Part shown: positions 394-60,007 of the stretch, in pieces
How the letters are laid out: each line of letters opens with the position of its first letter
How positions within the stretch are numbered: position 1 is the first letter of the stretch
Assembly (NCBI RefSeq): GCF_032062105.1
Contig: NW_026940531.1
Coordinates: 1 to 64,000 of the forward strand
Direction of reading: 5' to 3'
Source of the DNA: Saccostrea cucullata
Taxonomy: Eukaryota
DNA: 64,000 bases
Translations under genes and position numbers: made by a program
The notes under the pieces: model-generated
Told to the model about the DNA's origin: nothing
What the model saw: the letters and a program-made list of their open reading frames with translations, nothing else
Database searches by the model: none

Positions 394-2044
394 AGCAGCT
401 AAGGGGGTCACTGACTTCAATAACTTTCCTCTATGCTAGTCCCACTTCTGGATTTTTTTTTTGTTAAGCTCCCGTGAGTAGTATCCTCTTAAATTAGACA
501 GCTTGGTTTGCAACAAATCAATTGTAATTTTGAAAAGTGCTATCAATCATGTTATTTATTTGCATATATATATGTATGTTTTGAATTACTTAAAGACAAA
601 GACTAATAGAAAATAATTCTTACTGGTTCCATTTATACCTGGGAAATCCTCCTTCAACTTTGTCAGAATATTTTCTAAAGCTTTTCTTCTACAATCCTTG
701 TTGCAATTATTAGCGGAAGAAACATTCCTAAAACTATCTCTTCTTGATATTGTTCAGCTAATCTTTCTGTCTGCTTTGTGGTTAATTTTAGCATTCTCTT
801 TTATTTCCAGCCATTTTGAATGGAGAGCAAGCAAAAGAAAATGTTGGTTGTTCTTTATATAGATCCTCTCTAACCTTATCCATGCTGGGTAAAAATAACA
901 GACCTGCCAGACGGAATAGAGCATGTCTATATTCCATCTGAATTCATTTCTGTCTTAATTATAATTTTCCTATTTTAACCATCTGATTTGGAAGATGTTG
1001 CAAGTCACATCTTACAAATCGGAGCGTGTAAAAAAGGCTTTAAGGAATCGATATAAATAAATGTTGAAGTTTGTCCTGCGAATACCATTTATAATTAGCA
1101 CGACCGTCGTATGAATAACGACCGTTGTGTGGATATTGGTAATTAGCACGACCGTCGTGCGTATAGGTGGCAGAGGAAAAATTTACTTTTCAATCAAAAC
1201 GTTTGACACGATTTACCTAATATTGAGCTGGTTTTAAAAATGTCCATTAACAAAATTTAAATTCAGTGTACATGTAATAATAGTATGATGTAGTCCTTTG
1301 AGAAATTTTAAGCTTTTAGGATGTTATATTTGGATGGCGTAACTTTGCCAGTTTGTCAGCATTGGTTATCTTTCCTATTAAGGATTTTTTGGGTATGTTT
1401 TCCTCCTTAAATGCGTTCAGATTACAATACCCATAAGTGTAGACTTGGATTATCACAATAATAAATAATTTCTATGTGTATGTTTAAAATTTGTGTTGAG
1501 AGAATCAGTATCGCACGTCGGAGCAAAAAAAAAAATGCTAAGGAGCTACAGACAGACACGGGCCCTGTGTGCAAGTACATGAACCCTAAATGTAGAATAT
1601 ATTTGTTTGTTTTTTTTTCACAAAAACTATGCAATTAAATATTGTATATTTTGAACATGTTTGAGAAGAACGGTTTAATGAGGCGCTGAAGACACGGGGC
1701 CTAAGGATCAGCGAACAAGAAAGGTCCCTCACTGCTGAGTAATGTATCACCGTGTTTTTGGTGATATTTTTGTTTGCTGATGTAATGACCTGAAAATAGG
1801 ACAGGAGACGAATAAAGTTTACGTTTTTAAACTAATAAGGACAGATGAGAAATAACAGACCAATCAACTATACCATAAAGACCTGACAAACCGCATCTGC
1901 AGAAGAACAAACATATCTGCAGGACACTGTGCAACAGCCCGAAGAAACGTAACCCAAAGTTAGACGATAACAGCTGACATCAATACTGACACCAATACAG
2001 AGGAAACTGACAACCCACCGATAGAAACCATTCAGTGTGACCCA

Positions 2045-2770
2045 GTGATTATGGCTACTGGATTTAGCCTCCCAAAGTTCAATGGTTCTGAAACCCCAGT
2101 GATATGGATTTCTAAAATCGACTCATGGCAGAAGTTCAATAATTACAATGATCAGAAAATCCTGGACTTACTTCCTTGTGTCCTAGAAGGGAGTGCAAGC
2201 ACATGGTACCAAACCATGCCTCCATGCAATTACCTTGCAACATTTAAGCAGCAACTAACAGAAAGATTTCAACCCATAATGTATGGAATGCCTCTCATGG
2301 TAATTGGCAGGATACAAGTGAAACACTTGACCAATACCTAGAGAGAGCCGAACGCATTGGCATGATACATGACATTGCTGATACTACAAGTTCAGGCCAC
2401 TGCATCAGGTCTCCTACCTCCGTGGCGTGGAAAAGTTTTGGCCCGTGAGCCAAAGACATTTCAAGAACTTAGAAATGCCGTTTCAAAGACTCAAGTGGAA
2501 TTAAGTGACATTCAGCCTCAAAGTGCTCCACAGACTTCCACCAGTGATGCCAGCCTTGCCAACTTGTGTACCGTGTTAGCTACCCAGATGACGGAACTAA
2601 CCAAAAACATTAAAGCGGAAATCAGTGCTCTCCATGTGGCCAGCCAACCACCACAACAACAACGCTGGAACAACCAGCCTGGCAGACGCCCCCAGTACCA
2701 GCCACGCGGACAGACTGATGACAGACCCAATGAGCAACAGAACTTCAGATGCAAATATTGTAATATTGTG
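2045..2770 (+). pseudogene. Gypsy/Ty3-like LTR retrotransposon gag fragment (frameshifted)
   Basis: Capsid-like motifs LPKFNGSE..WI.K and LEGSASTWY...FKQQLTERF, followed by a Q/R-rich region and a truncated Zn knuckle (CKYC). Confidence 0.7.
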
Positions 2771-2974
2771 TTGAGTCATGTAGTAATGAGAAACATGTCC
2801 AGCTTTTAACACTAACTGCTTTAAATGGCACCACAATGAAAAAGTTTGTTTCAGAAAACGTAGAAATTTGCACAACAAATACAACACTAACACAAGCACC
2901 AACCCTTACTCTTCCAGTTAGGGACAGCGCCTGTCCCAAACAAGGATAGGCACTCAATTAACAATGCAGAAATA

Positions 2975-3410
2975 ATTTTTCCCAGTGATGCAGGTGTTTC
3001 CAGGGGGTCAATTTTTTTGAATGCTTTCAAAAGAATCTTCAAGAATTGTCCCTGTAGATAACCAAACTTTGATCATATGCTTTGCTGCCCCAAAGATAAT
3101 ATTATGCAGGGGGTAAATTTGACATTCGGGGGGAAAAAAACTAGAAACTTAGGTCTGAAAACTAACACCCATATCACTCTCCAAATTCGACTTTTCAGAT
3201 TTGGTTTTAGCTCCCAAAACTTTATCAATAGAGAAGATGGCCCTTTGTTTCTCTTTTCTGCCACTCTTTTCTATCAAGCCCGGGAAATTCTCTATTTCCT
3301 ACAGCCCCGGGGGAAATTCTTTAAAACATTTAAACAACCAGGGGCCCCAAAAACCCGCACAGTTTCCTTGTTGCCGGAATATGTATCCCACAAACATAAC
3401 GGCTAGTTTG
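2975..3410 (-). pseudogene. CMC-like transposase fragment (degraded mirror copy)
   Basis: Reverse complement of 17595-18035 with many homopolymer-type differences. Confidence 0.55.
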
Positions 3411-5218
3411 ACAACACACAACCCCCCCCCCCCCCCCCCCTTAGACCCCAAACCATCTTTGTTTATTAACTACTGCAAAAAATTACAACAAACCCAGAGC
3501 TCTTTAGTATGCAGTGTAGAGAGGGTTCTTAATATAAGAGTATTATGTATCTGACGGGTATTTAAGAGTAAAAAATTTAATCCTATAGTATTAAGGATGG
3601 AAATCTTTAAATCTAAATTTAAAAAATGGAATATCACAGTTTGTAATCATTTGAAATATTCATAACATTTTGAAAGGGAAAATAAATTAAAGAGGTTATT
3701 AATGTTTACTTTTTCTGTAAAATAACCAACATTGATTTCTATTCACTGCTATGGTTTTGTGTTTGATTATTTTCACTGGGGGGTTTAAAGCCACTTACAT
3801 AGAATGAGTTTTAAAGATGCTTTATTAAATATTTTACATTGCTAGACTGATAGCTATTATTACATTTTTATCACCAAGAAAAAACCACTTATGAATTTAC
3901 CAATTCAGTTTTTGATTCCATTTTGTTAAAGATGAGTTATTGCTAGACTAATAGCTATATTACATTTTTTATCACAAATAAAAAACAAAAAAATTTTAAA
4001 CAGTCACATACTCAGCAGACACTGCCTGCCGTCTCCATTCTTTAGCTGCTGTGTTAAGCATTTATCTTCTCTCAGCAACCCATTCTGGAGGGAGATTTCC
4101 AAGAAGCTAAATAAAGATATAAGAATTATAGACCAATTTTCATTAAAACAAAAAATATCCTGTTTGTGTATAATTATAAACTAGAATTTCCAAGGAATAC
4201 ATGTTTCACCTGCTTTTAGCTTTTATTAGTGTTAAGCTATTTATACGTAGCATATACAACATGTACAATGTACTTTATTTATGAAAAAAAAATCTAGCAT
4301 GCAAGCAACAAACAACTTAGTTACTGTAAATTGGTAATTTTTGCTTTTGAATGTGTAATTATGCATCTAAAATTAAACTTTTTTAGGGTTTTCAAATAGT
4401 TACATTAACAAAATGTCAGAGTACACCTATAAATTGATTGGCGAAGCCAACGTTTTTTTTGGGTTGTTGTTGTTGGGGGTGGGGGGTTCTATGCAATAAA
4501 GACTGCATTAAGGTAACATTCATTTGAAAAAAGTGGTAAAGGAGGAAAGAGTACCATACAGACCTTTCACTCTATTCTGAAATTTTCGACATTTTTAACA
4601 AATGTTTGATGTTCATACTTCATAAATTGAAAGTTTTATCCTTTATCTGGAGTTGACAGTACCCTGTCTTAATATTCTTTTGTATTCATATACTTAGTAC
4701 ATTGCTTGTTTCATACATTATAATATTGTACAAACAGAAAACAGACAGACAAACAGATTGGCATTCTGATAGCTATGACCCTCTCCCCCGACCACTTCAC
4801 ATGGTAAAGTAATCTCAGAATACTTCAATGTTCTTACCTCAACTTCTTCCCAGAAAGTACGGGTATGATTGTACTGGCTTCTTTGCCTTGCTTTTGGAAC
4901 CTCCGATGGGCCTGAAAATTGGGGGGGGGATTAAATCCGCATCATCCAATTTGTTTCTACCTTATCATCTTTATGACTGGCCAATATTTCTTTCATGCGT
5001 GGATTTATAAATTTTTGCTCACTGTTGCACAGAGTAAAATATATAAAAAAAATTAAATAAACTTTTTAAATTTAAAATTTTATTGAAATATGCCATGCGT
5101 TAATTACAATAGTTCCTCTGGATGAACTATCCTAATAATTTAAAAATGCAATATATTTGAATTCATGCACATGTATGACAAAACATATCCCTTTAATTAT
5201 ACTATATATCCACAGATA

Positions 5219-5482
5219 TTAACACATATCAATAAAGTAATGCTCAATATAATGCTTTTTTGTAAATAGGATTAATTTTCTGTTATGTATCTGATACATG
5301 TGTGAGACTTGATTATACACCTTTTTTGTCAGTTTAAAGCTTTTATACCTAAATACTAAAGCAAACTTACCTAATGTCCTCAGCTGACCTCTTTTCAGAA
5401 GGAGGTGGAATTCATCGACAAATTCCTTCACATCTAATCCATAGAGGTACTTGAATTCCTCGTCAGTTACATAAAACCTCAT
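5219..5482 (-). CDS. 87-aa hypothetical protein (mirror copy)
   Basis: Mirror of 15491-15754 with only conservative changes (E/D, R/K). Confidence 0.4.
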   Translation of the reverse strand: MRFYVTDEEFKYLYGLDVKEFVDEFHLLLKRGQLRTLGKFALVFRYKSFKLTKKVYNQVSHMYQIHNRKLILFTKKHYIEHYFIDMC

Positions 5483-5644
5483 GGATGAAATCTGAACAGT
5501 GACATCTTCTTCCCCAGCATCAGTCTAAAAAATTTAAAGTAGTACAAAATACCCGTGGATTCTATTTTAACTGATTTCTCAAAAAGAAATGGAGAAAAAA
5601 CAAGATGTTTTTGTGAAACACTATGCGCCCAGTGCCGTAAAAGA

Positions 5645-6335
5645 GTACCAAGTTGTACAGGGAGGTCATACGAAATTCAACTCCTCGCTTTTTCTATTTC
5701 GAAAACATGGTATCCTAGATCGGTGAGATTTATGAATTTGGTATCATTCACTTCTATGGTGGCTTCTTCAGTTCCTTTTACATATTTAATTTCCTGATGT
5801 TTAGACTGATCCATGATAAGTGATCTATAGATAGAATGACCTCTCAGCTTTGATATATCGGCTGAAATTACCATAGATGGATCCCTAAATTGTATCTCCA
5901 AGGCGACGGTCGTTGGTCACTTCGCGCACAAAGTTTCGAAAGCATCTACTGGGGTATATTCAATCACCTGGTAAATGCGGGTCACATCCATTCTATGGTT
6001 GAGATACCATTTCAAGAGTGGTGTAACTAGAAGAATTTTTCTAGCACGTAAACCACCTATGAGAAGTCGACGATGATTTTCACTTAGATTGTTTTCACGT
6101 GTATGATTCTGCTTGTGAAAACCAGTGGCGTCGAAGGGAATGTCTGTAGTGCATAAAATGGGATCTATCTACTGAAAATATTCGTATGGACTTAAACTTT
6201 TTTGCATTTGATCTGGCCACTGGTCCTCAATGTCAATGACAACTCTTGCTTGGGTTTCCTTGACTCTTGTTATAAAAAAAGATGAAGCACCAGTATCTGT
6301 GTCAATAAACAACAGCTCATTTGTTTTCTCAAGTT
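5645..6335 (-). pseudogene. Polinton-like pPolB fragment (mirror copy)
   Basis: Reverse complement of 14640-15330. Confidence 0.68.
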
Positions 6336-7329
6336 TTTTTTTCCAACAATGTAAGGAGTTTTACATCCACATTCAGAAGAAACATGTTCAAATTCTTCAT
6401 TAAATAACAATAACTTCTCAACAATGTAAAACTCAGCAGAGTTTAGATTACATAGTTAATTGATTTATCATTTTCCATCACTCTTAGTGTAAGACTGAGA
6501 ATAAACTAAATTGTCTTTAAACAAAAAGCGGCCGGTAGAGGGCTCTTTACAATTACTGATCACTTGCCTGTATATATCAGATATCAGACAGGCAGGCCAG
6601 TCAAATATTTTCATATCTGTTTAGACTGGTTCTCAAGTCTACATGGTTCCTTTTTCATACACTTCCGTTTGGAAGCAGCAGCGTGTTATGATGGACAACA
6701 TATTTTAATTGGCTTATTTTTCCTCCTATCAAAGTTCATGCACATCTAGGAATCGTGTAACGGTGCTTCCTAAGCAAGAACCATAGATCTCTAACGGATC
6801 GACACAATTTATGACCATCCTTAAATTATGTGAGGTAAAATCCTTATAATACCTTTTCAATTTGTATATTGATGTTTTTGAAGCAATTTTAAAGGTTATT
6901 TTATGCATTGACATTGCCCTTAATGCATATTTCGGTAAGTTTTGTCAGCCTTGAGTTTGTAATACAAAATTTAAAAAAAATTGTCATAAGACAATCATTG
7001 AATTATTTTCATGCTTTATTGATTGTTTTCTCTGGTTAATTTGCACTCACAATATTTTAAACTTCTTTGTTATAATTGAAAAGACAGTTACATGTGGTCA
7101 GTAAGCATATGATATGCATTATGACTTATAGGTAACTACATGTATATTCTTCTTTATATTTATTTTTTTTCAAAAACAAGTTTCTAAAGCATATAATATT
7201 TTACAACTCTTTCATTTTTGAATTGAATGCATCATTTTTTCTGTTTATTCATTAGAATTTCCTTATCATAAAAGATTAAATGACTTTCAATATTAGATCC
7301 AGATGATCAAACTTTCGTAATACTTTTAC

Positions 7330-8877
7330 CTGTACATTCAAAGAATGATAGCATTTTCTGTTGACATAATATGCTTCATGTGCCATCCAAACATCCAAGG
7401 ACATTTGGAAAACCTAAATTTCATTAGAATAACAAATACATGTGTCACACTCACTGGTCTCTCTAGATAACTTAAAAATTAATGCAATTATTTAAAATCA
7501 AAAAAATTATTAAGCTCTGTAATATATACTACATATTGTATAAAATATTAATTACACAATATAACAATTTCAAATTTGATAAATAATTTTCTTTCTCTTA
7601 TTAATCCCCTACCGGTCAAACCAGAGGGGACTATAGGTTTCCTCTGCGTCCGTCCGTCTGTCTGTCCCCGTCAGTCTGTCCCACTTGGTTTTCCACACTT
7701 CTTTTTCTAAACGCTTGCAGATATTGAGCTGAATTTTGATACGTGAGTGTATCTTAATGAGTTACAGATCAAGTTTGAATTTCGCTTCGCTGCATTGATT
7801 TTTTAAAGAATTATGGCATTTTGAATATATTTCATAATCACTTAATTAAGATCGGGTTCGAACTGCGCTAACTTCCGATTGTCGACAAAAATATGAAGCG
7901 ATGAAAAGACGATGGAAAAATGTGTTGAATTGTCGTCTTAATGTTGATTGATTTATTAGTTTTAAGGCATTTAAAACTTGAAAATCTTTCAGTTTAACCT
8001 TGGACATGACTTTTGCACATTAAAAAAATGACATCTTGAAGAGAAAGGGGAATCCGGTAGGGGACATGTATTGCTTATGCAGTACTCTCAGAATGCTTGT
8101 TTTATTATTGTATATCATTAAAGTATTCAAAATTATATTGAGTCCCGGTTCTTTCAATGAAATAAGAGTGTACAGTCCATTAATTTTTTTTTAAGAGCTG
8201 CAATTAATGGACAGATATAATTTCACATTCAATGTTTAAATATTAATTTATTTATCTTGTTTTTTTTTTTTTATAATATGGGACAAAGTATTGCATGAAA
8301 AAAAGTTAAACAGTATTGTATTGATGGTAATTTACGCTTTCATTCACTTGGGTTTAAAACTAACTATAGTTATAGGACCTTAACTAATGGGAGTCGAAAC
8401 GACAAGGTATCGAATTTCTGACGTCATTTTTAACAACTTTCGTTTTCTTCCCTGCAATGGCGGAGAAAGCACGTTTCACGGATAAGGTGTCGTTTCCAGT
8501 GGGGAATCTAACAAATCTTCGGCACAATTGGAAAGATGGGAAGCTATATCCCGAATACATCTGCCGGCCGTACTCCGGGAAATATTCAACGAGTCCCCGA
8601 TGAGAAGGTGGATAGCACCAGTGGCCAAGAACCTCAGGCATAGCAGTAACTGCAGCAGTGGTGGCAAGGGGTTGTTGCGTCCTGTGGGTCTTGATTGGGA
8701 AAAAGTCCGAGGATGAACAGGATCCTCTGAGGTCGGAAACGATACCTTTCGAAAACTTCCTCGTCCAAATCTTCGTCCAAATCTTCAAGGGGATTGGAGC
8801 GGTCTCTAAAAAAACCTCGGACGCCTGTGCTGCTGTACATTTCGATAGCGTCAAACTAATACCCTGCAAGCTGCCAT
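7330..8877 (-). pseudogene. PIF/Harbinger HARBI1-like transposase, intron-containing and disrupted
   Basis: Exon 1 reads PLE.LDEE.FERYRF...LQLLLCLRFLATG...IGDSLNISRST..RCIR...VRFP...VKRAFSAIAG. Exon 2 (~7330-7415) reads GFPNVLGCLDGT* after a ttag acceptor. Confidence 0.8.
7600..8101 (+). mobile_element. Non-autonomous Helentron (HINE/DINE-like) in the HARBI1 intron
   Basis: 5' subTIR tcccctaccgg, (GTCC/GTCT)n microsatellite, 3' subTIR ccggtagggga plus hairpin gtattgc-ttat-gcagtac, T-rich flanks. Confidence 0.75.
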
Positions 8878-9659
8878 TTTTACAGTCGACACTTGAGATT
8901 GACTCTGAGGTTGGTTTGAAGCATACTTGAAAAATCTTGAGTTTGTACTCCGTTGGAGTTAAAGAATGAGTAGAATAAATTTTTAATATGTTTTACGGTG
9001 CGACCGTTGGGACGAGTGCAGTTTATTTACTATCATACACCTACACATGTACTGTCTATCATTCAAGAAAAAAAGAAATACAAATAAAACAAAACAACAA
9101 AAAGAAATCATTTCCCAAGCATCGGGATCGAAATTCGAAAATTCTCGGAAGTTTCCGACAAAATCGGAAATACCCGAACCGTTGAAGTGACGAAAGTCTG
9201 ACGTCAGAATGAGAAAAAAAGTTCTGTTGACTGAGAACGCAAACGCTAGTTTTATGGAAAAGAGATTGCATTAAATCGTTCTTTTCATGTAAATTGTTGC
9301 TATGTTTCAGCCGAGTTTCACTGAAGCAACCGACATAACTCCGTCAAAATTCGTAAGTTTCCGGTGACGTCATTTGTATATTTCCGAAGGACAAGGTGAA
9401 GGCCGGTGTTGTGGCATGGGGGTATTTTTTTTAATAAGGTAAGGCAAAATCATTTCGTTAAGATTTCGGTAAGAAACAAGGTTCCTTTAATTTTTTACTA
9501 TTTTGGATTTATTCGCGCAAAGGACATTGGGTAGTGCAGGAATTCCGGGAAGGTTGCACAGAGAAATTTGGCTGACGTATGTACAGATTTCAATCCGAAT
9601 TTCCTCTGTTCATACACGTTAGTCTATTGAGCTCGCTTCGCGACGCTCGCTGCGCCCGC

Positions 9660-9757
9660 TTTAACCTCCATTTAGGAGTACGAGTTTGAATTTGGAGTAG
9701 GAGTTTGAGTTAGAGTACGAATTTGAACTCTAAAAGGTTTTATAACCTCGGGGCCTG
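9660..9757 (-). mobile_element. Probable terminus (TIR) of the Harbinger-type element
   Basis: Ends ...ttttataacctcggggcctg with short gagtttga-like subterminal repeats, upstream of the HARBI1 ORF. The partner TIR was not seen. Confidence 0.45.
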
Positions 9758-10388
9758 ATTTCAATATAACTTGGCACACAAGTAGACAACACTAAGATAC
9801 ATATTTCTTTGCATCGGTTTTTGAGTTTGATGAACAGTGTTGCCATTGTTTCTTATTATTCATTGTATAACTTTCTGTGAAATTCTTTCATAATGCTACT
9901 CCATAACTTGGCACACAAGTAGACTTCACTAAGCTGCATCATTCCTTGGTTTCTGAATTCGATAAACGGTGTTGCCATGGTTATTAATTTTTTTGGTGAA
10001 ATTCTTTCAAAATGCTACTCCTTCAGTTTTTAAGATTTCAATATAGCTTGGTAAGTAGACTACTTCAAGATACATAATTCTGTGCATCGGTTTTTTATTT
10101 CGACGAACGGTGTTGCTATGGTTACTTACAATAGAAATTTATGTTTATTTTTTTCAAATGCTACATTTATTTCAGTTCTCATTCGAGTTCTATAAAACTT
10201 AGCAGACAAGTAGACCAGACTAAGATATGTAATTCTGTGCATCGGTTTTTATTTTGATGAGTAGCAAGGCTCAATTCTCTATTTACTGCTGTTTTACAGT
10301 TTCAAGTTTAAAGTCCCAACTGCTAATATTCTCTTCCTTTGTTTTACGAACCAGTAGAGCTACAGTCTCGACAGAGACTTCTGGTTAA
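9758..10388 (+). mobile_element. 3' part of a HINE with degenerate internal tandem repeats
   Basis: About four diverged units (aacttggcacacaagtagac...tgcatcggttttt...ggtgttgccat) and a terminal hairpin agtctc-gaca-gagact followed by tctggtt. Confidence 0.5.
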
Positions 10389-11545
10389 ATTTACATTACC
10401 ATCACTGTCTATCTGCGATTTGCTTTTGTGCGTAAGTATAATTGAATGAATTGCAGGTTAGCCTTGTTAATTATGTCTTCCAATGTGGTGTTTTTGTCCT
10501 ATAAAGGTTTTAGCTGTAAATCTGTCAATTAACTCAACTTCCATTTTCGTCACCTCTTCATGCTGATGTTCTCCATTAAGGTCAGACGAGACGTTCCTCA
10601 AAAATCGTTTTATATATCTTTACAATGCATATTTAGATGAGTGCTCACGTATTTGTGAATTGGCACTTTCTCTGAAAAACCCAGCCGGGGTATTTGTCCT
10701 ATTGGACAGTTCTTGGTTTTTTGGCAGGAAACAGTGTACAATTTACCTTGAGTACTAATTGTTAATATTTGTAATTTTTTGCTCAGCCTTATTGATCTTT
10801 TCTTCTTATTCTTTCATTTGCTCAAGAACATCTCTTTCAAGAACTCCATTTTCATCTTTCCCTGAAATGATGAAGAAAATATCAACTTATATATAAATAC
10901 TTTTTTATTCATGTGTTTTTGTATGTTTTATACAACACAACAATTATTCTTAACACTTTCAATGTATACTGGATACGTTAATATTTTAATTTAACGGATG
11001 CCTCATTCGATTCTTTACCTTTCTTCATCAATATAGATAAATCATCCTTGTCCTCGTTTGGTGCACTTACTGTGGTACTAAAAAGAAAAAAAAACACTGT
11101 TGTTACATCTGCTCAATTTTTTTTCTGGTCCCTACACAACAAAATGCTACTGAACAAAATTTTTCGTGTCACATTAAGTCCATTAGCCAGCTTCATATTT
11201 ACTAGGGATTATAATCGAATACAGAATTGCTAAACGATTAACCGCATGACATTCCAATCGATCTACCTTTTAACATACAAAATTCCACATTTTCTTGTTG
11301 TTCACATTAAGTTCTTTTCCCCCGGCGGCTCCATTGGTCCATATAAAATTGAATGTCTTGATGTTAAATCACTTTATTTGAATGGAATTCTTGCTTTTAA
11401 AACCCTATGACGTTGCACACGGTGTTGGCACACACTGACGTTACGTCAAAATAACGTTAAAAGTCATAACGTTGTTATGAACCTTATACCTGTATATTTC
11501 AGATCTTTGAATGAATTTTATTTTCAAAAGTATAAAAAAAATAAA

Positions 11546-11763
11546 ATACAAGAGGCCCAAGGGCCTTGAATCGCTCTTCTGATAAATTGTACAACCTATC
11601 ACTTGTATTTAAAGCCTCTAACCCTAGGTATCCTGAGACCAATCAAACTGTGTAAGTTGATGCATTTGGGGTTTTCCAAGAATGTAGACCAAGAAGTAGT
11701 TCTTATTGGCTAAGAATCATCAAACTTTGTCAGGTGGTGCAACTTTGGTCTCAGGATACCTCA
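11546..11763 (-). mobile_element. 3' terminus of the satellite-bearing HINE family, rearranged at the palindrome junction
   Basis: caagaggcccaagggccttgaatcgctcttctga. The subTIR gctcttctga matches the 5' subTIR at 28567 and its mirror near 35870. Satellite monomer pieces follow. Confidence 0.7.
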
Positions 11764-18970: not shown

Positions 18971-20118
18971 TAATCACTGGGTCACACTGAATGGTTTCTA
19001 TCACTGGGTCACACTGAATGGTTTCTATCACTGGGTCACACTGAATGGTTTCTATCGGTGGGTTGTCAGTTTCCTCTGTATTGGTGTCAGTATTGATGTC
19101 AGCTGTTATCGTCTAACTTTGGGTTGACGTTTCTTCGGGCTGTTGCACAGTGTCCTGCAGATATGTTTGTTCTTCTGCAGATGCAGTTTGTCAGGTCTTT
19201 ATGGTATAGTTGATTGGTCTGTTATTTCTCATCTGTCCTTATTAGTTTAAAGACGTAAACTTTATTCGTCTCCTGTCCTATTTTCAGGTCATTACATCAG
19301 CAAACAAAAATATCACCAAAAACACGGTGATACATTACTCAGCAGTGAGGGACCTTTCTTGTTCGCTGATCCTTAGGCCCCGTGTCTTCAGCGCCTCAGT
19401 AAACCGTTCTTCTCAAACATGTTCAAAATATACAATATTTAATTGCATAGTTTTTGTGAAAAAAAAAACAAACAAATATATTCTACATTTAGGGTTCATG
19501 TACTTGCACGCAGGGCCCGTGTCTGTCTGTAGCTCCTTAGCATATTTTTTTTTGCTCCGACGTGCGATACTGATTCTCTCAACACAAATTTTAAACATAC
19601 ACATAGAAATTATTTATTATTGTGATAATCCAAGTCTACACTTATGGGTATTGTAATCTGAACGCATTTAAGGAGGAAAACATACCCAAAAAATCCTTAA
19701 TAGGAAAGATAACCAATGCTGACAAACTGGCAAAGTTACGCCATCCAAATATTACATCCTAAAAGCTTCAAATTTCTCAAAGGACTACATCATACTATTA
19801 TTACATGTACACTGAATTTAAATTTTGTTAATGGACATTTTTAAAACCAGCTCAATATTAGGTAAATCGTCGGTCAAACGTTTTGATTGAAAAGTAATAT
19901 TATCCTCTGCCACCTATACGCACGACGATCGTGCTAATTACTAATATCCGCACGTTATTCATACGACGGTCGTGCTAATTATAAATGGTATTCGCAGGAC
20001 AAACTTCAACATTTATTTATATCGATTCCTTAAAGCCTTTTTTACACGCTCCGATTTGTAAGATGTGACTTGCAACATCTTCCAAATTAGATGGTTAAAA
20101 TAGGAAAATTATAATTTT

Positions 20119-20701
20119 ATGCTTGAGTTTCTGATTGACAATATCTATGTGGCTAACAACCAAGCTATATGATAAACGTGATGACTTTAACTTTTCTATC
20201 GTCAACTTCCCTTACTTATGCAGCAATATACCTTCATCACCTGCATACAGAGTATTTATATCTCAGTTGATTCGATACGCTAGAGCATGCTCTACGTATG
20301 AACAATTTCTTAAACGAGGTAAATTATTGACAAGCAAGTTGATGAAACAAGAATATCAACAGTCTCGTTTAAAGTCATCATTTTGTAAATTCTATGGTCG
20401 ATACAATGACCTTTTCAACAAATACAATTTATCATTGAATGAAATGCTGACTGACGTTTTTCATACCAATTGTTTGTCCATTATTTATACACTGAATTGA
20501 CCACGGATTTTTTTCCGTTATTTCCTGATTATGACAACGAGCACACGGCGGGTGTGACCGGTCGGCAGGGGATGCTCACTCCTCCATGGCACCTGATCCC
20601 ACCTCTGAAGTTTCGGAGGTCCGTGTTTGCTCTGCTCTTATTTTGTATATTTGTTTAATGGACGTTGAGAGTGAATACTGTTCGTTATTTCCATATCCTT
20701 C
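20119..20701 (+). mobile_element. Naiad-type Penelope-like element 3' fragment, truncated at the duplication junction
   Basis: TKLYDKRDDFNFSIVNFPYLCSNIPSSPAY.VFISQLIRYARAC (PLE RT thumb). The ORF ends without a C-terminal GIY-YIG domain. Confidence 0.8.
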
Positions 20702-30292: not shown

Positions 30293-30293
30293 A

Positions 30294-34413: not shown

Positions 34414-34418
34414 TGTCG

Positions 34419-48121: not shown

Positions 48122-51100
48122 TTTTTAAGAGAGACGCAAGTTACATGCAATTTGTAAACCATTTTCACACAAGACTTACCTTGAACATGTGTCACACATT
48201 TCCTAAAATTACATGTACCATATAAATGTATACAACATTCACTGGCATAGCTTTTGTGCAATAATCCAAATTACATTCCTAACCATTGTGGTATTTCATA
48301 AAATTTTATAGAACTTCTTTTTTTTTATTATGTTTATCGAGGACTGTTTGAACATTGGTAATGTATTTAACCTGCAATTAAAATTATAAAAGCAACCCTT
48401 TAAGCCATTTCAAGTTTTTCTGTTATGCCACCACATGCATCTTAATTTTTCATAGCTCGTATCAGAAATTACAAAGTCAGGATTCTTAAAATTTGCTATA
48501 TTGGTCAAAACCTTTTAATTCAGCCATTTCCTCTATTAAGGTATTTGATGTATAACGACCATATTTTGTACCTAATAAATGACTGGCCCGATATTCCTAA
48601 CCATGGTAGCATTTTGAAGATGTTATCAAATAAAAATGCTCCACCAAAAGAATTTACAAAATTTTCATTATTCTCCAATTAATTGCACCTTGAATTTTGC
48701 ATTGAAGTCTATGGGCAGCGCAGGTTTTTATAAGATATTGTAAAAAGTAATTTGAATTTCAAAAAAATCTCTTGGTGAAAATATGCATTTACTCTTTCTT
48801 TATTTAAATATCAAATAAAATGAATTATTTACTGCACAAATTTTGAGAAATCTTGAACTTTCTTCTTTTGCCCAAGGGCAGATAACTCTTTAAAAACTTT
48901 TAATGTGCAAAATGACAGTCTCCTTACATGTCATCAGTTTTGTGAATTTGGTTTATATCACTTTTATTGTTATCTAGCAATGCGTCTTTAACTAGTTTAA
49001 AATTATTTAAAATCGTTCAAAACCCCTTCGTTATACATCGAATACCTTAAATATTCCTCTAAGATGTGTTATAATTTGGTAGCATTTAAAACCTTGAAAT
49101 TTCTTTTGAAATAAAATCAATTCCTTTGAATTACATCACTTTTATCATCATTGTGTCAACAAAAACTTTGCCTACAACCTTTTAGTGGCTCCTCACCCAC
49201 TATGGCTTTCACATTTGACAGGTGTATTTCTTGTGACAAGACCTTTCTTTGTGCACCACCAAATTTGACCTCTTGACCTTGGAGTTTGACCTACTTTTTA
49301 CTAAAAAAAAATACCACACTTTAATCTTGGTCTTGACTTTTGAACATATGGAGCTAGAATAAAGAGTGTGCTAAAATTTACATGTCCCATATGGGTAACA
49401 ATTAAAGCTAAAGAAACATATAAGGAACTTGTTAAATGCTAAGAAAACCATTTTATGAATACTTGAACTTTGTCAAAAATGATCACCTCTTTTAGGTCAA
49501 GAATGGTTGAAACAATATGTAGGCCTTAAATGAACACTAAATTTTGGATTAAATTATATACCGCCAAGATTAAATATGGGTCAGACTAATAACAGGAAAT
49601 GGACAATACTGCAAGCTAGTGCAAGGTTTTGCTATACAAAAGAAAAAAATTGTAGTTTAGAAAATATGTAAATGTAATCAGAGCGAGCGCAGCAAAGGTC
49701 GCAAAGTAACGCGAAGTGAGCTCAATAAACTTACATGTAAGAACAGAGGAAATTCGGAATGAAATCTGTACATATGTCATGCAAAATTTGTTGTGACACC
49801 TTCCCAGAATTCCTTTGCAACCCAATACCCTTTACGCAAATAAATAATAACATAAGGCATAAAAGACTTTCAGTATGTAGAAATCTTAAAAATAAACAAA
49901 AAATAATAACTCTGCAACTTCTTTTGACAAAAATTGCACTAAATCTATTAGTCTCAACTAGATGCTTGTCTGTTTCCGTTAACCCTGACTATCTCTCGTA
50001 TGAAGTAATAATCTAGATGTTTCATGCGACTTGACGTTTGAAGTGGCAGATCAACATTTCAGGTGTATTTTTTAAGGTACAAGTGCGCTCGCCCAAACGG
50101 TCACATCGTAAAATATATTAATGAAAAATACAAGTCTTAATTCTTGATAACTACTTTTTAACCTTGTAATCACAAAAAATAAATACATGTTGTCATTCTA
50201 ATGAAAGGTGGGACTAATATCAGTAATATACCCGTTGAATGCAATTTTTTAAAAATATTAATTCCGATTGTTTCAATATATCAATAATCATGAAATATTG
50301 TTTAAAGTTAACAAAATATTATTTCCAACTTTCAGTTATTTTCATAAAAAAATGCCCATAAAACAACAATGAACTGCATGTAGATCTGTAGTCTTTTTAT
50401 TATACTGTTGTCTTTTTTTTTTTTACCATTTTACACACTCTTCTAAGCTTTATTTTAACCAATTGTCAGGAACCTGTGCAGATGATATATTCCTTGTCTC
50501 CGCAATTGACACAAAATCACAATCAAGAGTTTCCTTTCTGCAAACTTCAATAAACACTTGTACTGATACTTTTACTAACAATAAGTTATCCTTTATAAAC
50601 ATCTACTGATGAGTCATGACAGGTGTACCTATACGCAAGAGTTGTCCCTGTTAGTGTAGACGACTTTTACATTTACAAAAGTTATTCCCCTTTGTGGGGA
50701 CTATCCAGGGTCAAAAAGCTTAAGGCACTGTTTTCCCTCTATAACATTACCATCTTTATAATTCAGTATCTTAGTAATAAAATCTGTATGAATAGGTTCA
50801 TAATTTACATGTTACCTCATACTCTGGCAATACAGGTACAGATCAAAATTGTCTGAAAACATTTGGAGACAGTGGGAAATAGATCGTTACGCCGACAACG
50901 GGGGAAACTCTTAGAAATGTAAAAAAAAAAATGTAAAATTCGTCTATTTATGTTATGCAATGACAAACTATTACGCTTCGTTCTACTATGTAAATTTTAA
51001 AAAGAGATAATCTTCTCAATCTTCTTTAACACTAGTAAAATGTAGCAGTATCTAAATGGACTTGTTTTTCTCCGAGAGACTTCAACTGCGCAGTATGATC

Positions 51101-51816
51101 GCTGTGTGCCCATTGCATAATAACAAATTAATGCTGCATGAACAAATATACGCAAGTTTGTAATTATTCAGCAAAATCCTTTACTCTTCAAACCTTACAG
51201 AATAAAAACAACAATCGGCAATGAATACTTTTGTTCCAGATCCGTGTAAACACTAAATTTCACTTTACTTCAGTCAGTTCTTTGTCCACACATCAAAAAT
51301 GGCTGACGTGCCTCGTTTTCATTTATTTGGTACACCGCGCCCGATCGAAAAAAAAATAAAGGTAAACCTAATCTGTTGATACATGTATCTTTTCGTACGG
51401 CCACAAACTAGACAAAATTGAATGTGCACTACATAAGGTTACTTGCACATTAATGTAATTACTCACAGTTCTGTTGCCTATGGGATCTGGGGAAGAAGAT
51501 TTTTAAATTTTAAAGGTTTTCTGATGTATTCTTATGTAAAATTTACTCATCCATTACGGCCCCACCCTTGCCCCAGAGGTCTTGATTTTAACAAATTTGA
51601 AGCTGCATCACCTGAGGGTACTTCACTATGAGTTTCATCTTTCTTGACCACTTGGTTCTTGATAAGAAGATTTTTAAAATACATCATTACTTTTTCACTA
51701 ATTCCTAATTATCTCCCCTTGAAAGAGGGCATGGCCCTTCATTTGAACAAACCTGAATCCCCTTTACCTAAGGATACTTTATGGCAAGTTTGGTTGAAAT
51801 TGGCCTAGTGGTTCTT

Positions 51817-51852
<36 letters not shown>

Positions 51853-51881
51853 GACGACAACGACAACGACAGACAACGGAC

Positions 51882-51913
<32 letters not shown>

Positions 51914-53130
51914 TGGCTCAGGTGAGCTAATAAAAAAACGGGTATTAAGTGACTCCGACCCTTAGCAAGGAATGGCAACTCTTTAATTTATACTTTTATT
52001 CAAGAAGTCTTTAAATGAATCTTGAAAATAAAATATTTTCATGCAACAATTTTCATTATTTGTCTCTCAATTTGCTTTAAGGTTCTTTGGAAAGCTCCAT
52101 AAATCATCTCTAATTTCATATAATGTCAATAAACATTGGAATCTAAAAATGCTTTTACGGGATAAAAATTTTCTAGTTTTAATTAGACCTTTCTGAGAAG
52201 TTCAAAGAAGCACATTGAGATGCGTATGTAAGCATGTGCTTACGCCCAATTTGATACCTAATTTTTCGTTCGGATTCAACAATGAAATTTAATAATTTTT
52301 GGTTGGTATTATCAATATAATTGAGATTTTTGTGGTTGGTATTATCAGCATAATTGAGCAAAGCTTTTATATCAGTTTTTGTCATTTGTTCCTGCCAAGT
52401 GGCTGGTGTAGGGAGTATGTCTGACAAGCCTTGATTTACCTGGTGGAGGGAGTATGCCTGACAAGCCTTGATTTGGTCATCAGTAAGGATGGCTGTTGTT
52501 TCTAAATCCTTGTAAATAGCAGCAGTTGGTGTGCTGACTTCAGCGAGGGAAAAACTTTCACTGAAGTTGGTATTAAATTCTTTGAGACTCTTCTTTATTC
52601 TCTCACTGTTTGAAGACAACTGCTTCGAAATTCTTTTTGTCATTTCTTGTCCATCTGTACAAATTATATAAGAACATTAGAAAATTCGAAGTTGCATTTA
52701 TGCTCAACTGCGTACAGAAAAACTTGGTTATAATGAAGTCACTGGGATCTAGTACGAAATAACCTTGATATCCTTTATTTAACAAAACAACTTTGTTTCA
52801 GACTTTTCATATGTTTTGTTTCGTCAGAATGAGTTTACGTTGTAAATTAAACATGATTAATATAAGTGCTCATAACTAAACATTCCAAAAAATGTACAAC
52901 CCCCACATTTTTACACATGAATTGACTGATTTTAAAAATTAAAGCGACTAGTTTTCATTTTCATGTAGATACCACTCAAAAAGTTCTAAGAACGTGTTGA
53001 AAACTTGTCATCACTAAAATTGATGGCATAATATGTGAGGAATTCAGGGAATCTCCCAACTAGAAGTATACGTACATGTATGAAATCTCAACTTCTCTAA
53101 TTATGAAACAAAAAAGGAAAATCATATTAT

Positions 53131-54388
53131 AACTAGAGAACTGACCAGTCAGGAAGGGCCCCGCCATGGGGTAGAATTAAAAGGGTGCAGCTTACAGAAT
53201 GATTAATAAATGTACAAAGAAAAAGCAACAGCAACTGTATTCTTAAAATTTCAACATAATTCCTGAAAATAATCTTATTGTATTTACATTAGGCAGTAAA
53301 GAACAACTTAACATTGAATTTATATTTAAACAATTATGAATCTTGTGTTATATAAAATACCAGCCTTCAATATCATGAAGGCTTGACCTTAACTTCAAAC
53401 AAACAGCAGTTGCAGACAAAGGTTTTCATTAATCTTAAAGTGACAGATAAAGAGAAGCCTACTAAATTTTCTGCAGCAGGCTAGATAATTAAACCCAAGG
53501 GATTAATTGTACCTCTCTCATCATTTTCTTCTAAAATTACAATAAGAACGTTTTCAGTATTAATGATAGAATGGGGTTTTTATACAACTACATTAAAAAC
53601 ATTCTTGAATTAATATATTTAAAAAAAAAAGGAAAAAAAGTGAAAAAAAAAGTACCCTGGTAAATTAAAAAATCTTCTTTAATCTATTTCTTTTTTTGGG
53701 GTTCAATGAAATCATAACTATCAAACAAAAACAAATAATAAAAAATTATATTTAAATCCACAATTCAGAGTGTTCATAGCATTCCAAATTGATTTAACTT
53801 CAAAACAAACTTCATTTGCAGACAGAGGTGGTAATTAATCTCAATGTGACGGATAAAGATAATGCTCTGGATTTTCTTCAGGAGGAAAGCTAATTAATCC
53901 CACGGGACTCCTAGTTGCATCCAGTTTACTGAATGGGAACATCTTCAGCAGTTATCTCTCTTTGCCAATGCATTCTTATATAAGTTAAGGAATCTACCCC
54001 ACCACCCCAGCTCCAAACCAAGGGACATTGAGGACCAAACTTAGCATCAAAATATGTATTTTTGCCTACTGAACTACCGTACCAAATTTGATCTTAATTG
54101 GGCAACCATAAAAAATGTTGCCTGTTCATTCTTATGCATAGTTAAGGAATCTACCCCACCACCCCAGCTCCAAACTAGAAGATGTAGAGAATCAAACTTA
54201 GCATAAAAATTTGTATTTCTGCCTATTAAACTACCATACAAAATTTAAACTTGATTGGGCAACCATAAAAAAAGTTATTAGAAAAAAAACAGAAAATTTG
54301 TGGACGGAAGAGTGACAGACAGACGGACGGACGGACAGACAGAGTGATTACTATAGGGCACCCGCAAATCCTTGCGGGGCCCTAATAA
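53131..54388 (-). mobile_element. HINE (mirror of 25190-26452)
   Basis: Reverse complement copy in arm B. Confidence 0.75.
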
Positions 54389-55329
54389 CAGTTTAGATAG
54401 TTGGGAGTCAAAAACGCAATTTTACATATACATAAACTTTGAGATATTGAGGCTAGAGATCATGATGTTCAACTGTATTCAGCAATAAATAAAAGAATTT
54501 AAAGAAACATATTTTTACCAAAATATTTCTTTAGTAAGGACAGAATGTACTGCCTTTCATTGGCAAACATTTGCAGTTTTTTTTAAGATGTCCATGCCTT
54601 AACTTATGTTTGGCAGACTCAGAAAGTTCTTCCATTCCGGCAACCAAACTTTGAACATCTAATTGCAAATTTTTTTTTCATTTCACTTCTGGGTTCTGAA
54701 GAAGAATAAATTAAACAAGTCTAAAAATCAGTAGAGTTTTACAATCTTATCAACAAGCTGTTTATACTGCTTTTTATGTGTTTCTTTACTAGCCCCTTTT
54801 TTTGAAATGCACACCATCTTCATTAATGTTGATATAGTTATGTTGAAAAAAAAAAACAATCCAAATGCAAAATAAAGCTTAATAGGAAGCTATCAGCTTA
54901 GTTTCTCAAATTTAACTTTTTATCTCTAATTGACACAAGTGCAATCAAACTTTGAAATATATTCAAATAAAAAAAAAGAAACTTGAAGTTCGACCATAAA
55001 TAACTGATCCACACTTTCGAACTTCTCTAAGTTGTCCATGTTCTCAAGGTTTTTCAAAGTAAAACCTTTTCCAAGGTCTATTTCTGGTTATTTTCTCCAA
55101 CTGGGAAAGGGACATCGACTTTTGTTTGGATGTTTTGCAACAGTTCAGTGTTAAAACGTACCTGTCCTTTAATTTCTTCCAAGAAACATGAGATATAGAC
55201 CTCATAATTATCAGTGTGATATTTAAGTACTGATGGCACTTTGATTGTTTTTAACGAACCTAGGACCACCTACTAACTTTTCTTTTATATCATTTGTTAG
55301 GTTAAAAAACCAAACTGAATACGAAATAG

Positions 55330-55822
55330 TCCCTTACTTATGCAGCAATATACCTTCATCACCTGCATACGGAGTATTTATATCTCAGTTGATTCGATAT
55401 GCAAGAGCATGCTCTGCGTATGAACAGTTTCTTAAACGAGGTAAATTATTGACAAACAAGTTGATGAAACAAGAATATCAACAGTCTCGTTTAAAGTCAT
55501 CATTTCGTAAATTCTATGGTCGATACAATGACCTTGTCAGCAAATACAATTTATCATTAAATGAAATGCTGAATGACGTTTTTCATACCAATTGTTAGTC
55601 CATTATTTATACACTGAATTGACCACGGATTTTTTCCGTTATATCCTGATTATGACAACGAGCACACGGCGGGTGTGACCGGTCGGCAGGGGATGCTCAC
55701 TCCTCCATGGCACCTGATCCCACCTCTGATGTTTCGGAGGTCCGTGTTTGTTCTGCACTTATTTTGTATATTTGTTTAATGGACGTTGAGATTGAATACT
55801 GTTCGTTATTTCCATATCCTTC
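55330..55822 (+). mobile_element. Naiad-type PLE 3' fragment (mirror of 23754-24246)
   Basis: PYLCSNIPSSPAYGVFISQLIRYARAC and the shared 3' UTR. Confidence 0.8.
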
Positions 55823-57607
55823 TTCAGAAAGCAATTCATTAAAAAATTTTTGAACTCCTTCTTTGAAAGTGTCTTGGACAATAAGGCACCAAGGAACTTG
55901 TAGATGGTGCCCTCCTCTCTCAGTCCAAGCAGCTGGGCAAAGAGCATTCTGTTGACTTTGCTGTTGGTCTGTTGCTTCAGCCCCCACTCTCCATACAAAT
56001 TCATGATCTCCTCCACCAGGGCATAACACACTCACTTCATGAAATATGCCTACGTGACAAGTCTGCGTGATTCACACACCAATAACTCACACAAAACTGA
56101 AAAACATTCCTTAAATAAAGCAAACATTATTATTTCAGAAATAAAAGCTTATGTGCAGACAAGTGAAAGATCACATGAATATTTTTTATGCGCCAGAATC
56201 CATTGATAGGGCATATATTGTTTTTGTCCTGCCTGTCTGTTTATCTGTTTGTCTCTCTATTGTCAACTTTAACCTTCACCATAACTTTTGAACTGAGAGA
56301 GTAAAAGACTTCATATTTGGTATGCATACTCCACATATTAAGCTTGTTCATATGGTACCAAGTGCAATGACCTTTCCTGTGACCTTATGCTAAAAATAGC
56401 TTTTTTGAACTATGGTCATATTTTTTTAACCATAGGAGATAGAGACTTCACATTTGGTATGCATACTCAACTAATTAAGTTCTTTCAAATGACACCTAGA
56501 TCAATGATCTTGACTGTGACCTATATGCTAAAAAAGGTTTTAGCTTTGATTAATTATTCTCCCTCCAGGGGTCAAGATTTGAACAAACTTGATTTTAAAC
56601 ACATGATGCTGCTTCCACATAAATATGATCTATCATAACTTTCCTGTTTTCATAATGTATGTTTATAAAGATTTTTTTCCTATATATTCTTGTCTACAAC
56701 TTTGTTGGGGTCCAACCCTACCCTTGGGGGTCATGATTTGAAGAAATCTGATTGTACACTAACTGAGGATGCTTCCGCGTAAGTTTTATCTCTCTTGGCC
56801 CATTGGTTCTTCAGATTTTTTTTCAAATAGTGTGATTAATTTTACACTTATTATTTATCATCTCTCCCTTGAAAGAGTCGTGGGCCTTTATTTTCACAAT
56901 CTTGAATCCCTTCAACCAAAGATACTTTTAATAATATTATACGAAGTGCAACATACCTCAAAGTTCAGTTCTTTTTCTGCATGTCGATCTTTGCCGTTCA
57001 TTGATGCTTTGGTCCAACATTTCGGTCACTCCAACTTGAGCTATATCAGGTTGAAGCTGTCGCTGTATCCTAACATTGTATAAAACTGAGAATTTTTAAA
57101 TGAATACATAATTAAAAAAAACTGGTAATATATTGAAAAATAAAGTCTTTTGCATTATATTGATTTTAATTCAAAAGAATCATGATAAGGGTATTTATAA
57201 TCATATAAAAATATTTTCGCATTTATCACAGTATAGCTTATGTCAAAGGGGATCACGAATACCCCGCTTCTGTCTAAGTCGATCGCCGGTCCCGGCCGTT
57301 TTCTCTACATATATATTTCAAAAAACTATACTGATATCTCGAACACGGTAATCTCGATTACCCTACTTATGTCGCAGTATATTCAAAGTCCCAAGCCCTT
57401 TTTTACCTGGCTTTTCTCGAAGTGCAGTGATTTTTTCGTTCTTTTGAACACACCTGGCGTCATGACTTCACACATTATCGCCATTGGCTATTAATTAACA
57501 CCTTAAAACCTGGGGAAACTTAATTAACCGCAAGCTCAAGTTGGGTATCTCTGACAGGTTTATTGGTATGACAGCTTGGGTGTTTGGCTTACCAGTTTAT
57601 AAATGTC

Positions 57608-58777
57608 CACACTTCATTTCACTATGCACCTTTAAATATAAACACAATTAACACCTTAATATGCACTGTAGCGCATCGAGCAGGTTGGCGCCAGGTTTAT
57701 TGTATTGAATATATTCAAACATACAAACAAAGCAGTTCTGATATAACATTTTGCCAACAAACAAACAGGTAAAAACATATACACACATCGACATTTATAT
57801 TGATGCAATAGAATCTAAGCCTTAGAGCCTCCTCTGCCGCCCAGGAAAAACCATAGATAAAAAATATTTTGAAAAAATTATGGAAACCTGTGTATCCGCG
57901 GCAAATGCAGAGTAAGCGAAAAAATTGAGTGGCGGACCCTCACTCATCTTTAAAACATCCAAAAAGCTTATTCTTAATTTGAAAAAAAATTATAAATTCA
58001 ACTATTGTATTTAAAAAACAAAATTTAAAACACGACGTGCTCGGGAAAGCGTGCGCTAGAAAGTGAACCCTTACTAACCACCCGTATATTCAATCGAACA
58101 CGTTTTTCTCAATACTAACATTTCATTGGCTGAAACCTACATAGCAATTTTACCTTAGTAACACCACACTTTCGTATTCGTTTACATGTCGTCAGGACAA
58201 TTATTTTTCGCTATACTTCGTAACGCGAAAAAATGTAAGTCAACACTTCATTTCACTATGCACCTTTATATATAAACACAATTAACACCTTAATGTGCAT
58301 TGTAGCGCACCGAGCAGGTTGACAATAGACATAACCAAAGAAAGGGAGAGAAAGGGACTAGAAAAATATATATATATATATAAATAACTTACAACAACAA
58401 TTGTTTCGTTACATGTAATCTTTTTTCTAAAGAGTCTTTGACATAAACATTTTACTAGACATCGATTTCCAACGCCTGTGCCTTTGTAAAAACCTTTCAT
58501 TAACACCAACATTTGCAGCCGCAGTTGCACCCCCTGATCTGAGAGAATGGAGACCAATATTTTATAAAAGTATCAATATATTGCTTTGCTGCAGTATAAA
58601 TAAGCTTCTTGTTTTTAAATATCAATTTTGAAAAACCATTACTTCTGAAAGCGGGATTAAAAAGAAAATGATCAGAACATAAATCAATTTCAGCCTCTTT
58701 TGTATAACGCAGAAACATAGCATATGGACAAGCACTTGTGATACCTTTTGCAATAAGTACTTCATTTCCATCTCTAT
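57608..58777 (-). mobile_element. Ngaro/DIRS-like 3' end (mirror copy)
   Basis: Reverse complement of 20702-21869, with repeats at ~58243-58321 and ~57608-57687. Confidence 0.7.
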
Positions 58778-60007
58778 GAAGGATATGGAAATAACGAACA
58801 GTATTCACTCTCAACGTCCATTAAACAAATATACAAAATAAGAGCAGAGCAAACACGGACCTCCGAAACATCAGAGGTGGGATCAGGTGCTATAGAGGAG
58901 TGAGCATCCCCTGCCGACCGGTCACACCCGCCGTGTGCTCGTTGTCATAATCAGGAAATAACGGAAAAAAATCCGTGGTCAATTCAGTGTATAAATAATG
59001 GACAAACAATTGGTATGAAAAACGTCAGTCAGCATTTCATTCAATGATAAACTGTATTTGTTGAAAAGGTCATTGTATCGACCATAGAATTTACAAAATG
59101 ATGACTTTAAACGAGACTGTTGATATTCTTGTTTCATCAACTTGCTTGTCAATAATTTACCTCGTTTAAGAAATTGTTCATACGTAGAGCATGCTCTAGC
59201 GTATCGAATCAACTGAGATATAAATACTCTGTATGCAGATGATGAAGGTATATTGCTGCATAAGTAAGGGAAGTTGACGATAGAAAAGTTAAAGTCATCA
59301 CGTTTATCATATAGCTTGGTTGTTAGCCACATAGATATTGTCAATCAGAAACTCAAGCATCTTCTTGATGTCAACTTCAGAGTAATTATGTTTGCAATCA
59401 GAATCTGTTTTAACAAATTAATTTTTCAAATGACCAATGACGAGGTAAGTAAACTTACGAGTTCCATTTTTGTTGAAGAAGCAGCTGTCAATGATATCAA
59501 AAAGCCTGGATTTTAATTTGTCGTGCGGAATTGTTGTGTATAAAGTTGAAAAGTCGTAAGTTTTTATGCTGTTGATTTTTGTAAAGTCTTGTGATTTCAA
59601 ATTGTCCAAAAGTTCTTTAGAATTTTTAAGTATCCACATCTGATTGACACCACTTCTTGAATATATAGTTGTACAGTACTATTGAAGTTTTTCCTTCACT
59701 ACTGTCAATATTTTAGTGAGAAGTAACGAAAGAGGCTTGGTTGAACATTTACTGGAACCTGCAATGTATCTTTGTTTGTAAGGATTCTTATGAAGTTTCG
59801 GAATCCAATATATATAAGGTAGTTCAAATTCATTTTGGCTCTGTGGAATATTAAAAGTATTCAAAACTGACAGGTGATTTTGAAGAATTTCTTCCTTAGA
59901 AAGAGTAGTATATGTATAAGTAGGATTACCACTTGTAGAATTAAATCCAAGTTCTTCTAAAATGCAATTTATATAATGAGCCTTACAAACGAAGACAATG
60001 TTGTTCG
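58778..60007 (-). mobile_element. Naiad-type PLE, 5'-truncated and internally deleted, lying between the two parts of the YR element
   Basis: NNIVFVCK, LPYIYWIPKLHKNPYKQRYIAGS, MWILKNS and TYDFSTLYTTIPH. MLEFLIDNIYV jumps directly to LTTKLYDKRDDF, so the catalytic YxDD region is deleted. Confidence 0.85.

What the first reader, a model, noticed from the sequence alone, without database searches (positions are those of the whole stretch)
957..59360. Two giant palindromes fused back-to-back: an inverted copy of a tail-to-head (circle-like) junction
Seen: the layout is A-S1-A'-B'-S2-B, and A' ends at 20116 while B' starts at 20119, only 2 nt apart. Read on the minus strand, this junction joins position 59360 (mid-Naiad; the Naiad continues past 59360 only in B) directly to position 957. 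Arm A appears to run on into S1 (probable Harbinger terminus at 9757), and B' runs on into S2 (an extra satellite unit). The new junctions are therefore 11763/4, 20116/9 and 34418/9. Inference: the ancestral locus was A-S1-rc(S2)-B. A B-end-to-A-start junction (eccDNA circle or tandem duplication) then ended up inverted inside the locus, or three serial template switches occurred. A simple fold-back or a staggered-break inversion would not give this order.
Basis: partly seen in the sequence, partly recalled or inferred. Interest (0 to 1): 0.85.

Follow-up and report, generated by a model that had tools for sequence, protein, structure and literature searches.

The report
Double fold-back scar around one break
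About 21 kb of repeat-rich DNA, probably from an oyster, was duplicated into two back-to-back palindromes; both turning points lie in one small transposon and one holds a retrotransposon, which resembles the 'reciprocal fold-back' scars described in cancer genomes but appears here to be inherited, and no host gene was found in it.

Summary
The layout is confirmed: A 957-9216 / A' 20116-11764 and B' 20119-30157 / B 59360-34419, with A' and B' 2 nt apart. B also carries a 15.1-kb Helentron. Two other contigs reproduce the junctions and 38 arm-specific substitutions (0.5%), which argues against a read fold-back artefact. Raw reads could not be checked.

New here: the end of S1 and the start of B are the two halves of one ~2-kb HINE element. 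The two turning points were therefore ~25-410 bp apart in the ancestral locus, ~10.7 and ~10.2-10.6 kb from the outer breakpoints. S2 is one satellite unit plus a near-intact LINE. The left turn has an extra 130-bp inversion at a native 10-11-bp inverted repeat.

Best reading (0.5): one double-strand break in the HINE, plausibly during LINE integration; both ends folded back and the two copied arms were joined. It works like the reciprocal and L1-bridged fold-backs of cancer genomes, so it is a new variant of a known kind. No host gene was found. The scan had noted only the Helentron here.

The parts
957..9216 (+). Arm A (original copy); repeat-rich, includes a gag-like fragment
9217..11547 (+). 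S1: single-copy native continuation of A; inferred resection tract or deletion on the returning arm
11548..11642 (-). Y: 3' terminus of a HINE (palindrome plus 3' subTIR at 11572-11582), in native orientation
11632..11761 (+). X: 130-bp HINE segment inverted relative to Y (opposite arrangement in 37 of 37 family copies); bounded by a native 10-11-bp inverted repeat (11632-11642 / 11745-11755), now a 17-bp stem
11762..11763 (.). J1, left fold-back junction with a 2-nt insert
   Evidence: also in C7392
11764..20116 (-). Arm A' (inverted copy), cut inside repeats at both ends
20117..20118 (.). J2, B-end-to-A-start junction; no microhomology, 2-nt insert
   Evidence: also in C7392
20119..30157 (-). 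Arm B' (inverted copy); holds the empty site of the Helentron at ~27645
28566..30295 (+). HINE body in B': 5' subTIR, IR, microsatellite, 146-bp and 128-bp tandem units with palindromes of up to 15-bp arms; the last unit (30158-30295) is unpaired
30296..34203 (-). EN-RT LINE, single long ORF starting near 34200, short-repeat tail at 30296-30303; one frameshift shared by both contigs; longest copy of a young family
34204..34418 (-). 215-bp leader: LINE 5' UTR or captured DNA (unresolved); candidate 5-6-bp target-site duplication near its outer end; J3 at 34418/9
34419..59360 (+). Arm B (original copy); starts inside the HINE satellite and ends inside a Penelope-like element that continues to 60005
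36788..51930 (-). 15.1-kb Helentron (Rep, PIF1 helicase, endonuclease) present in B only

Best explanation
The ancestral locus was U-A-S1-[HINE]-B-D (supported by repeat-family continuity). One double-strand break opened the HINE (inferred), plausibly during integration of the LINE (about 0.55 given this model). The ends stayed unjoined, were resected unequally and were replicated. Each side then fused to its own sister copy. Left fold-back: breakpoints ~2.5 kb apart, with a 130-bp flip at a native short inverted repeat. Right fold-back: breakpoints 138 bp apart, bridged by the LINE, whose tail sits on the longer end. The two copied arms, which would both derive from the same parental strand, broke or ended ~10.5 kb either side of the centre and were end-joined (J2). 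This gives U-A-S1-A'-B'-LINE-B-D. Later the arms diverged by ~0.5% and a Helentron inserted into B. Shown: order, polarity, co-location of the turns, LINE position. Inferred: the break, its cause, the order of joins and how J2 formed. No function is proposed; it is most likely a neutral repair scar.
For: Both turns lie in one element: 10 family copies carry the B-type 5' part and the S1-type X/Y end 1.6-2.4 kb apart in the right orientation, and the subTIRs match 10/11. The gap between turns is ~25+128n bp. The centre is symmetric: 10,686 vs 10,202-10,586 bp, post hoc P 0.005-0.023 for a randomly opened circle. Arm divergences overlap: A 0.50% (0.35-0.69), B 0.67% (0.41-1.03) and 0.40% (0.15-0.87). 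The LINE tail is on the longer right-hand end and its 5' side meets J3. The LINE is young. Spacer sizes resemble the 429- and 2,059-bp offsets in PMC12807874. L1-bridged fold-backs and local inversions at the reciprocal end are described in 10.1101/2024.12.14.628481.
Against: J2 needs two further ends, and sequence alone does not show how they arose. The inverted spacer at the left turn does not fit a plain snap-back of the retained strand and fits an inverted-repeat crossover equally well. A candidate 5-6-bp target-site duplication and the unexplained 215-bp leader allow a separate LINE insertion. LINE age is compatible with either timing (P=0.18). The symmetry weakens to P=0.145 if the LINE was ancestral. 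No raw reads and no ancestral allele were seen.
Confidence: 0.5

Rival explanations
1. J2 came first. A ~21-kb circle or tandem duplication formed, then recombined or inverted at the HINE's short inverted repeats. This gave two near-perfect palindromes whose centres were later remodelled (2.4-kb deletion on the left, LINE on the right).
For: The insert is an exact circular permutation of A..B, the signature used in PMC7450558. A crossover at the 10-11-bp repeat predicts the inverted X seen at the left turn. Erosion of palindrome centres is expected (PMC10766186).
Against: It predicts X at both centres, and X is absent on the right. It needs two or three more independent events. It does not explain the central opening point or the LINE meeting J3.
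Confidence: 0.25
2. Serial template switching (FoSTeS/MMBIR or ODIRA-like) in one replication round, from an ancestor that may already have held the LINE.
For: [quoted passage not shown] The short junction inserts could be templated.
Against: It needs four switches, one of them ~21 kb forward in reverse orientation. J1 and J2 show no microhomology, and their templating is not significant (P about 0.12 each). There is no triplicated segment, so it is not the ODIRA product.
Confidence: 0.15
3. Assembly artefact: haplotypes or chimeric reads were stitched together.
For: The assembly is fragmented and redundant (23,869 contigs). C7392 itself leaves the locus abruptly at window 23155. The supporting contigs are near-identical outside repeats, so they are only semi-independent. 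Reads were unavailable.
Against: 38 evenly spread substitutions and 15 indels separate A from A' identically in two contigs. All junctions recur base for base in a second contig. B' variants phase consistently across three contigs. The junctions contain non-native sequence.
Confidence: 0.06
4. A giant foldback or TIR mobile element.
For: The genome appears to hold a family of long inverted pairs.
Against: A and B occur at this locus only, and every arm end cuts through an unrelated repeat.
Confidence: 0.02

Closest known systems
Reciprocal foldbacks from breakage-replication/fusion (PMC12807874)
   Same: Two fold-back junctions facing away from one small interval, each joining adjacent parallel breakpoints 0.1-2.5 kb apart.
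   Different: Described in cancers and cell clones (23 PCAWG cases). Here both fold-backs lie on one molecule, closed by a third local junction ~10.5 kb out on each side, and the arms have diverged 0.5%, implying inheritance.
L1-induced foldback and local inversion (10.1101/2024.12.14.628481)
   Same: A retrotransposon bridges one fold-back with its tail on the longer end; there is a short inversion at the other end.
   Different: The element is a single-ORF EN-RT LINE with a short-repeat tail, not L1. Causation is not shown and the 215-bp leader is unexplained.
Circular-DNA-mediated segmental duplications (PMC7450558)
   Same: Permuted order with the donor ends joined inside the copy; tiny indels at the junction.
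   Different: There the acceptor is 0.09-58 Mb away or on another chromosome. Here the copy sits inverted at its own opening point.
ODIRA / DUP-TRP/INV-DUP (PMC4689423, PMC10766186)
   Same: [quoted passage not shown]
   Different: No triplicated segment; copy number is 1-2-1-2-1 with three main junctions, and a head-to-tail junction lies in the middle.
Cg_HINE non-autonomous Helentrons (PMC7492417)
   Same: The split central element has subTIRs, an IR, a microsatellite, central tandem repeats, a 3' palindrome and T-rich flanks.
   Different: The unit sequences were not compared with the named Cg_HINE families.

Membership tests
Reciprocal foldbacks (breakage-replication/fusion) | [quoted passage not shown] | tested here: met
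   Left pair ~2.5 kb apart, right pair 138 bp apart
Reciprocal foldbacks (breakage-replication/fusion) | The two pairs face each other across a small gap | tested here: met
   Both lie in one HINE; gap ~25+128n bp, n about 0-3
Reciprocal foldbacks (breakage-replication/fusion) | Origin from one break with sister-derived copies | not testable with these tools
   Needs ancestral alleles; equal arm ages are compatible
LINE-induced foldback | Element tail on the longer (primer) end of the fold-back | tested here: met
   Tail at 30296 on B', which extends 138 bp beyond B
LINE-induced foldback | Element 5' end joined directly to the shorter sister end | tested here: inconclusive
   Family homology stops at 34203; 34204-34418 is unique here, and a possible 5-6-bp target-site duplication is present
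LINE-induced foldback | Insertion as old as the duplication | tested here: inconclusive
   1 shared lesion vs 3.1 expected, P=0.18
Circle-mediated duplication | Permuted order with a tail-to-head junction | tested here: met
Circle-mediated duplication | Acceptor site distinct from the donor locus | tested here: not met
   The copy lies at its own opening point
ODIRA inverted triplication | Three copies with the central one inverted | tested here: not met
   Each arm occurs twice
HINE (non-autonomous Helentron) | 5' subTIR + IR + microsatellite; 3' subTIR + palindrome; central tandem repeats; T-rich target | tested here: met
   Read directly at 28561-28635 and 11548-11582 against the definition in PMC7492417
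Naiad Penelope-like element (B end) | Clade placement and endonuclease domain order | not tested
   Only RT-like motifs by eye; Pfam blank

The most novel reading that the evidence does not exclude
A single LINE integration broke a germline chromosome, both ends folded back, and the two copied arms were joined locally. This would leave a stable, heritable double palindrome with no sign of further breakage-fusion-bridge rounds: a natural germline record of a process so far shown in tumours and cultured cells.
Probability: 0.28. Interest if true: 0.7.

Novelty: new variant of a known kind. Interest (0 to 1): 0.45.

Why it matters
If confirmed, fold-back fusion at one break can end in a compact, inherited duplication rather than a dicentric chromosome, and retrotransposons or palindrome-rich HINEs can seed 10-kb palindromes in animal genomes. 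The locus is testable by PCR and population long reads, and the B/B' pair brackets the age of a Helentron insertion. Limits: one locus, no host gene found, mechanism inferred.

Tried and rejected
Treating C7392 and C9482 as a second haplotype was rejected as unproven: outside repeats they differ from the window by about 0.1%, differences cluster in repeats, and those in the LINE are skewed to synonymous sites (30 synonymous, 26 not), which suggests polishing with paralogous reads. Templated-insertion signatures at J1 and J2 are not significant, and my test scored J3 as 0. No ancestral allele was found in the assembly (top candidates only). No tRNA or Rfam hit and no host-gene domain in arm ORFs. 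There is no clear arm-to-arm gene conversion: only 4 clustered sites. A paper search for the species found nothing. Three mechanism searches were empty, so the absence of precedent is only weakly tested.

Full report
Observation. The window is the first 64 kb of contig C22668 in a 1.17-Gb, 23,869-contig assembly. Self-BLAST gives A 957-9216 vs A' 20116-11764 (96.6%) and B' 20119-30030 vs B in three blocks (99.0, 97.5, 95.9%). B is interrupted by a 15.1-kb element with Helitron Rep, PIF1 and endonuclease domains, and its empty site is in B'. Aligning the satellite units shows that 34419 pairs with 30157 and that B lacks one 128-bp unit. S2 is therefore one unpaired unit (30158-30295), an EN-RT LINE (30296-34203) and a 215-bp leader.

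Is it real? C7392 matches window 4-23155 at 99% and C9482 matches 21713-52456 colinearly. All three junctions recur base for base. In a four-way alignment of arm A, 38 substitutions in 7,580 clean columns and 15 indels separate A from A' in both contigs and are evenly spread. The lower raw identity comes largely from differences private to the window's own A, concentrated near the contig start and probably assembly errors. Fold-back reads would not give this pattern. Caveats: the extra contigs are nearly identical to the window outside repeats and may be redundant rather than a second haplotype; C7392 leaves the locus abruptly at 23155; and reads could not be examined.

Polarity. Repeat families run unbroken across upstream/A, A/S1 and B/downstream.

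The centre. S1 ends in a HINE terminus (Y, 11548-11642) followed by a 130-bp piece X (11632-11761). In all 37 family copies listed, X and Y lie in the opposite relative orientation. X is therefore inverted here, between native 10-11-bp inverted repeats that now form a 17-bp stem. B starts inside the satellite of the same family. Ten copies carry both the B-type 5' part and the X/Y end, 1.6-2.4 kb apart, and the two subTIRs match 10/11. By coordinates the turning points were ~25+128n bp apart. The element meets the HINE definition of PMC7492417, and most of its tandem units hold a palindrome with 8-15-bp arms. The outer breakpoints lie 10,686 bp left and 10,202-10,586 bp right of the centre; a randomly opened circle would be this symmetric with P 0.005-0.023, or 0.145 if the LINE was ancestral (post hoc). 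Arm divergences overlap, consistent with one event.

The LINE. Its tail abuts the longer right-hand end (30296) and its 5' side meets J3. It is the longest member found of a family whose closest copies are 93-98% identical and mostly 5'-truncated, and it has one frameshift shared by both contigs. Homology to relatives stops at the ORF start, and the 215-bp leader as a whole is found only here. A 5-6-bp match flanks it that could be a target-site duplication, so a separate insertion is not excluded.

Mechanism. One break with both ends resected, replicated and fused to their sisters gives two fold-backs. The long left end and the short right end would come from one parental strand, and the short left end and the LINE-extended long right end from the other. 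The two truncated arms, A' and B', are exactly the latter pair. Joining them yields the observed order. This follows the breakage-replication/fusion scheme and its 23 reciprocal foldbacks in cancers (PMC12807874), and the L1-bridged foldbacks and local inversions of 10.1101/2024.12.14.628481. How J2 arose is not shown. A circle or tandem duplication recombining at the short inverted repeat gives the same order and the inverted X (PMC7450558), but predicts X at both centres and needs extra remodelling. Serial template switching needs four switches, and the junction inserts are not significantly templated. ODIRA predicts a triplication, which is absent.

Verdict. The structure is very probably real (about 0.9). 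It works like a reciprocal fold-back and meets the two structural criteria I could test; the single-break origin is inferred (0.5). I found no description of this locally closed, inherited form, but my literature search was limited. No host gene, tRNA or Rfam RNA was found. New variant of a known kind; interest 0.45.

Noticed in passing
window 36788-51930: 15.1-kb Helentron with ORFs broken by two apparent frameshifts and an empty site in B'. C9482 lacks 111 bp at its left border and differs by larger indels.
   Followed up: partly
L008:5000-10000 (C7392:220000-225000): Repeat occurring as inverted pairs of 2.6-5-kb arms several kb apart on at least six contigs at 88-97% identity; a possible giant foldback family.
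   Followed up: no
L006:3518/9 (C7392:198518/9; window 23155): Blunt switch to DNA that starts at the same base on C11348 and C1292 (96%): an insertion, another allele or a misjoin.
   Followed up: partly
window 58778-60005: Young Penelope-like fragment (99% to 39 copies) with a ~320-bp deletion at 59326/7 shared by B and B'; partial copies at 29-393 and 55330-55822 (inverted).
   Followed up: partly
window 60178-61768: Weak integrase-SAM and RNase H hits on the minus strand, suggesting a tyrosine-recombinase retroelement fragment.
   Followed up: no
window ~33890-33930 (minus strand): The LINE ORF has a 2A-like motif followed by cysteine pairs before the endonuclease; from memory this is typical of CR1/L2-group elements.
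   Followed up: no
window 45051-45845: 51-bp in-frame tandem array (15.6 copies) inside the Helentron Rep ORF.
   Followed up: no
window 23566-23623 vs 55911-55953: Small local mismatch between B' and B (57-bp gap against a 43-bp overlap) beside the inverted Penelope-like piece.
   Followed up: no
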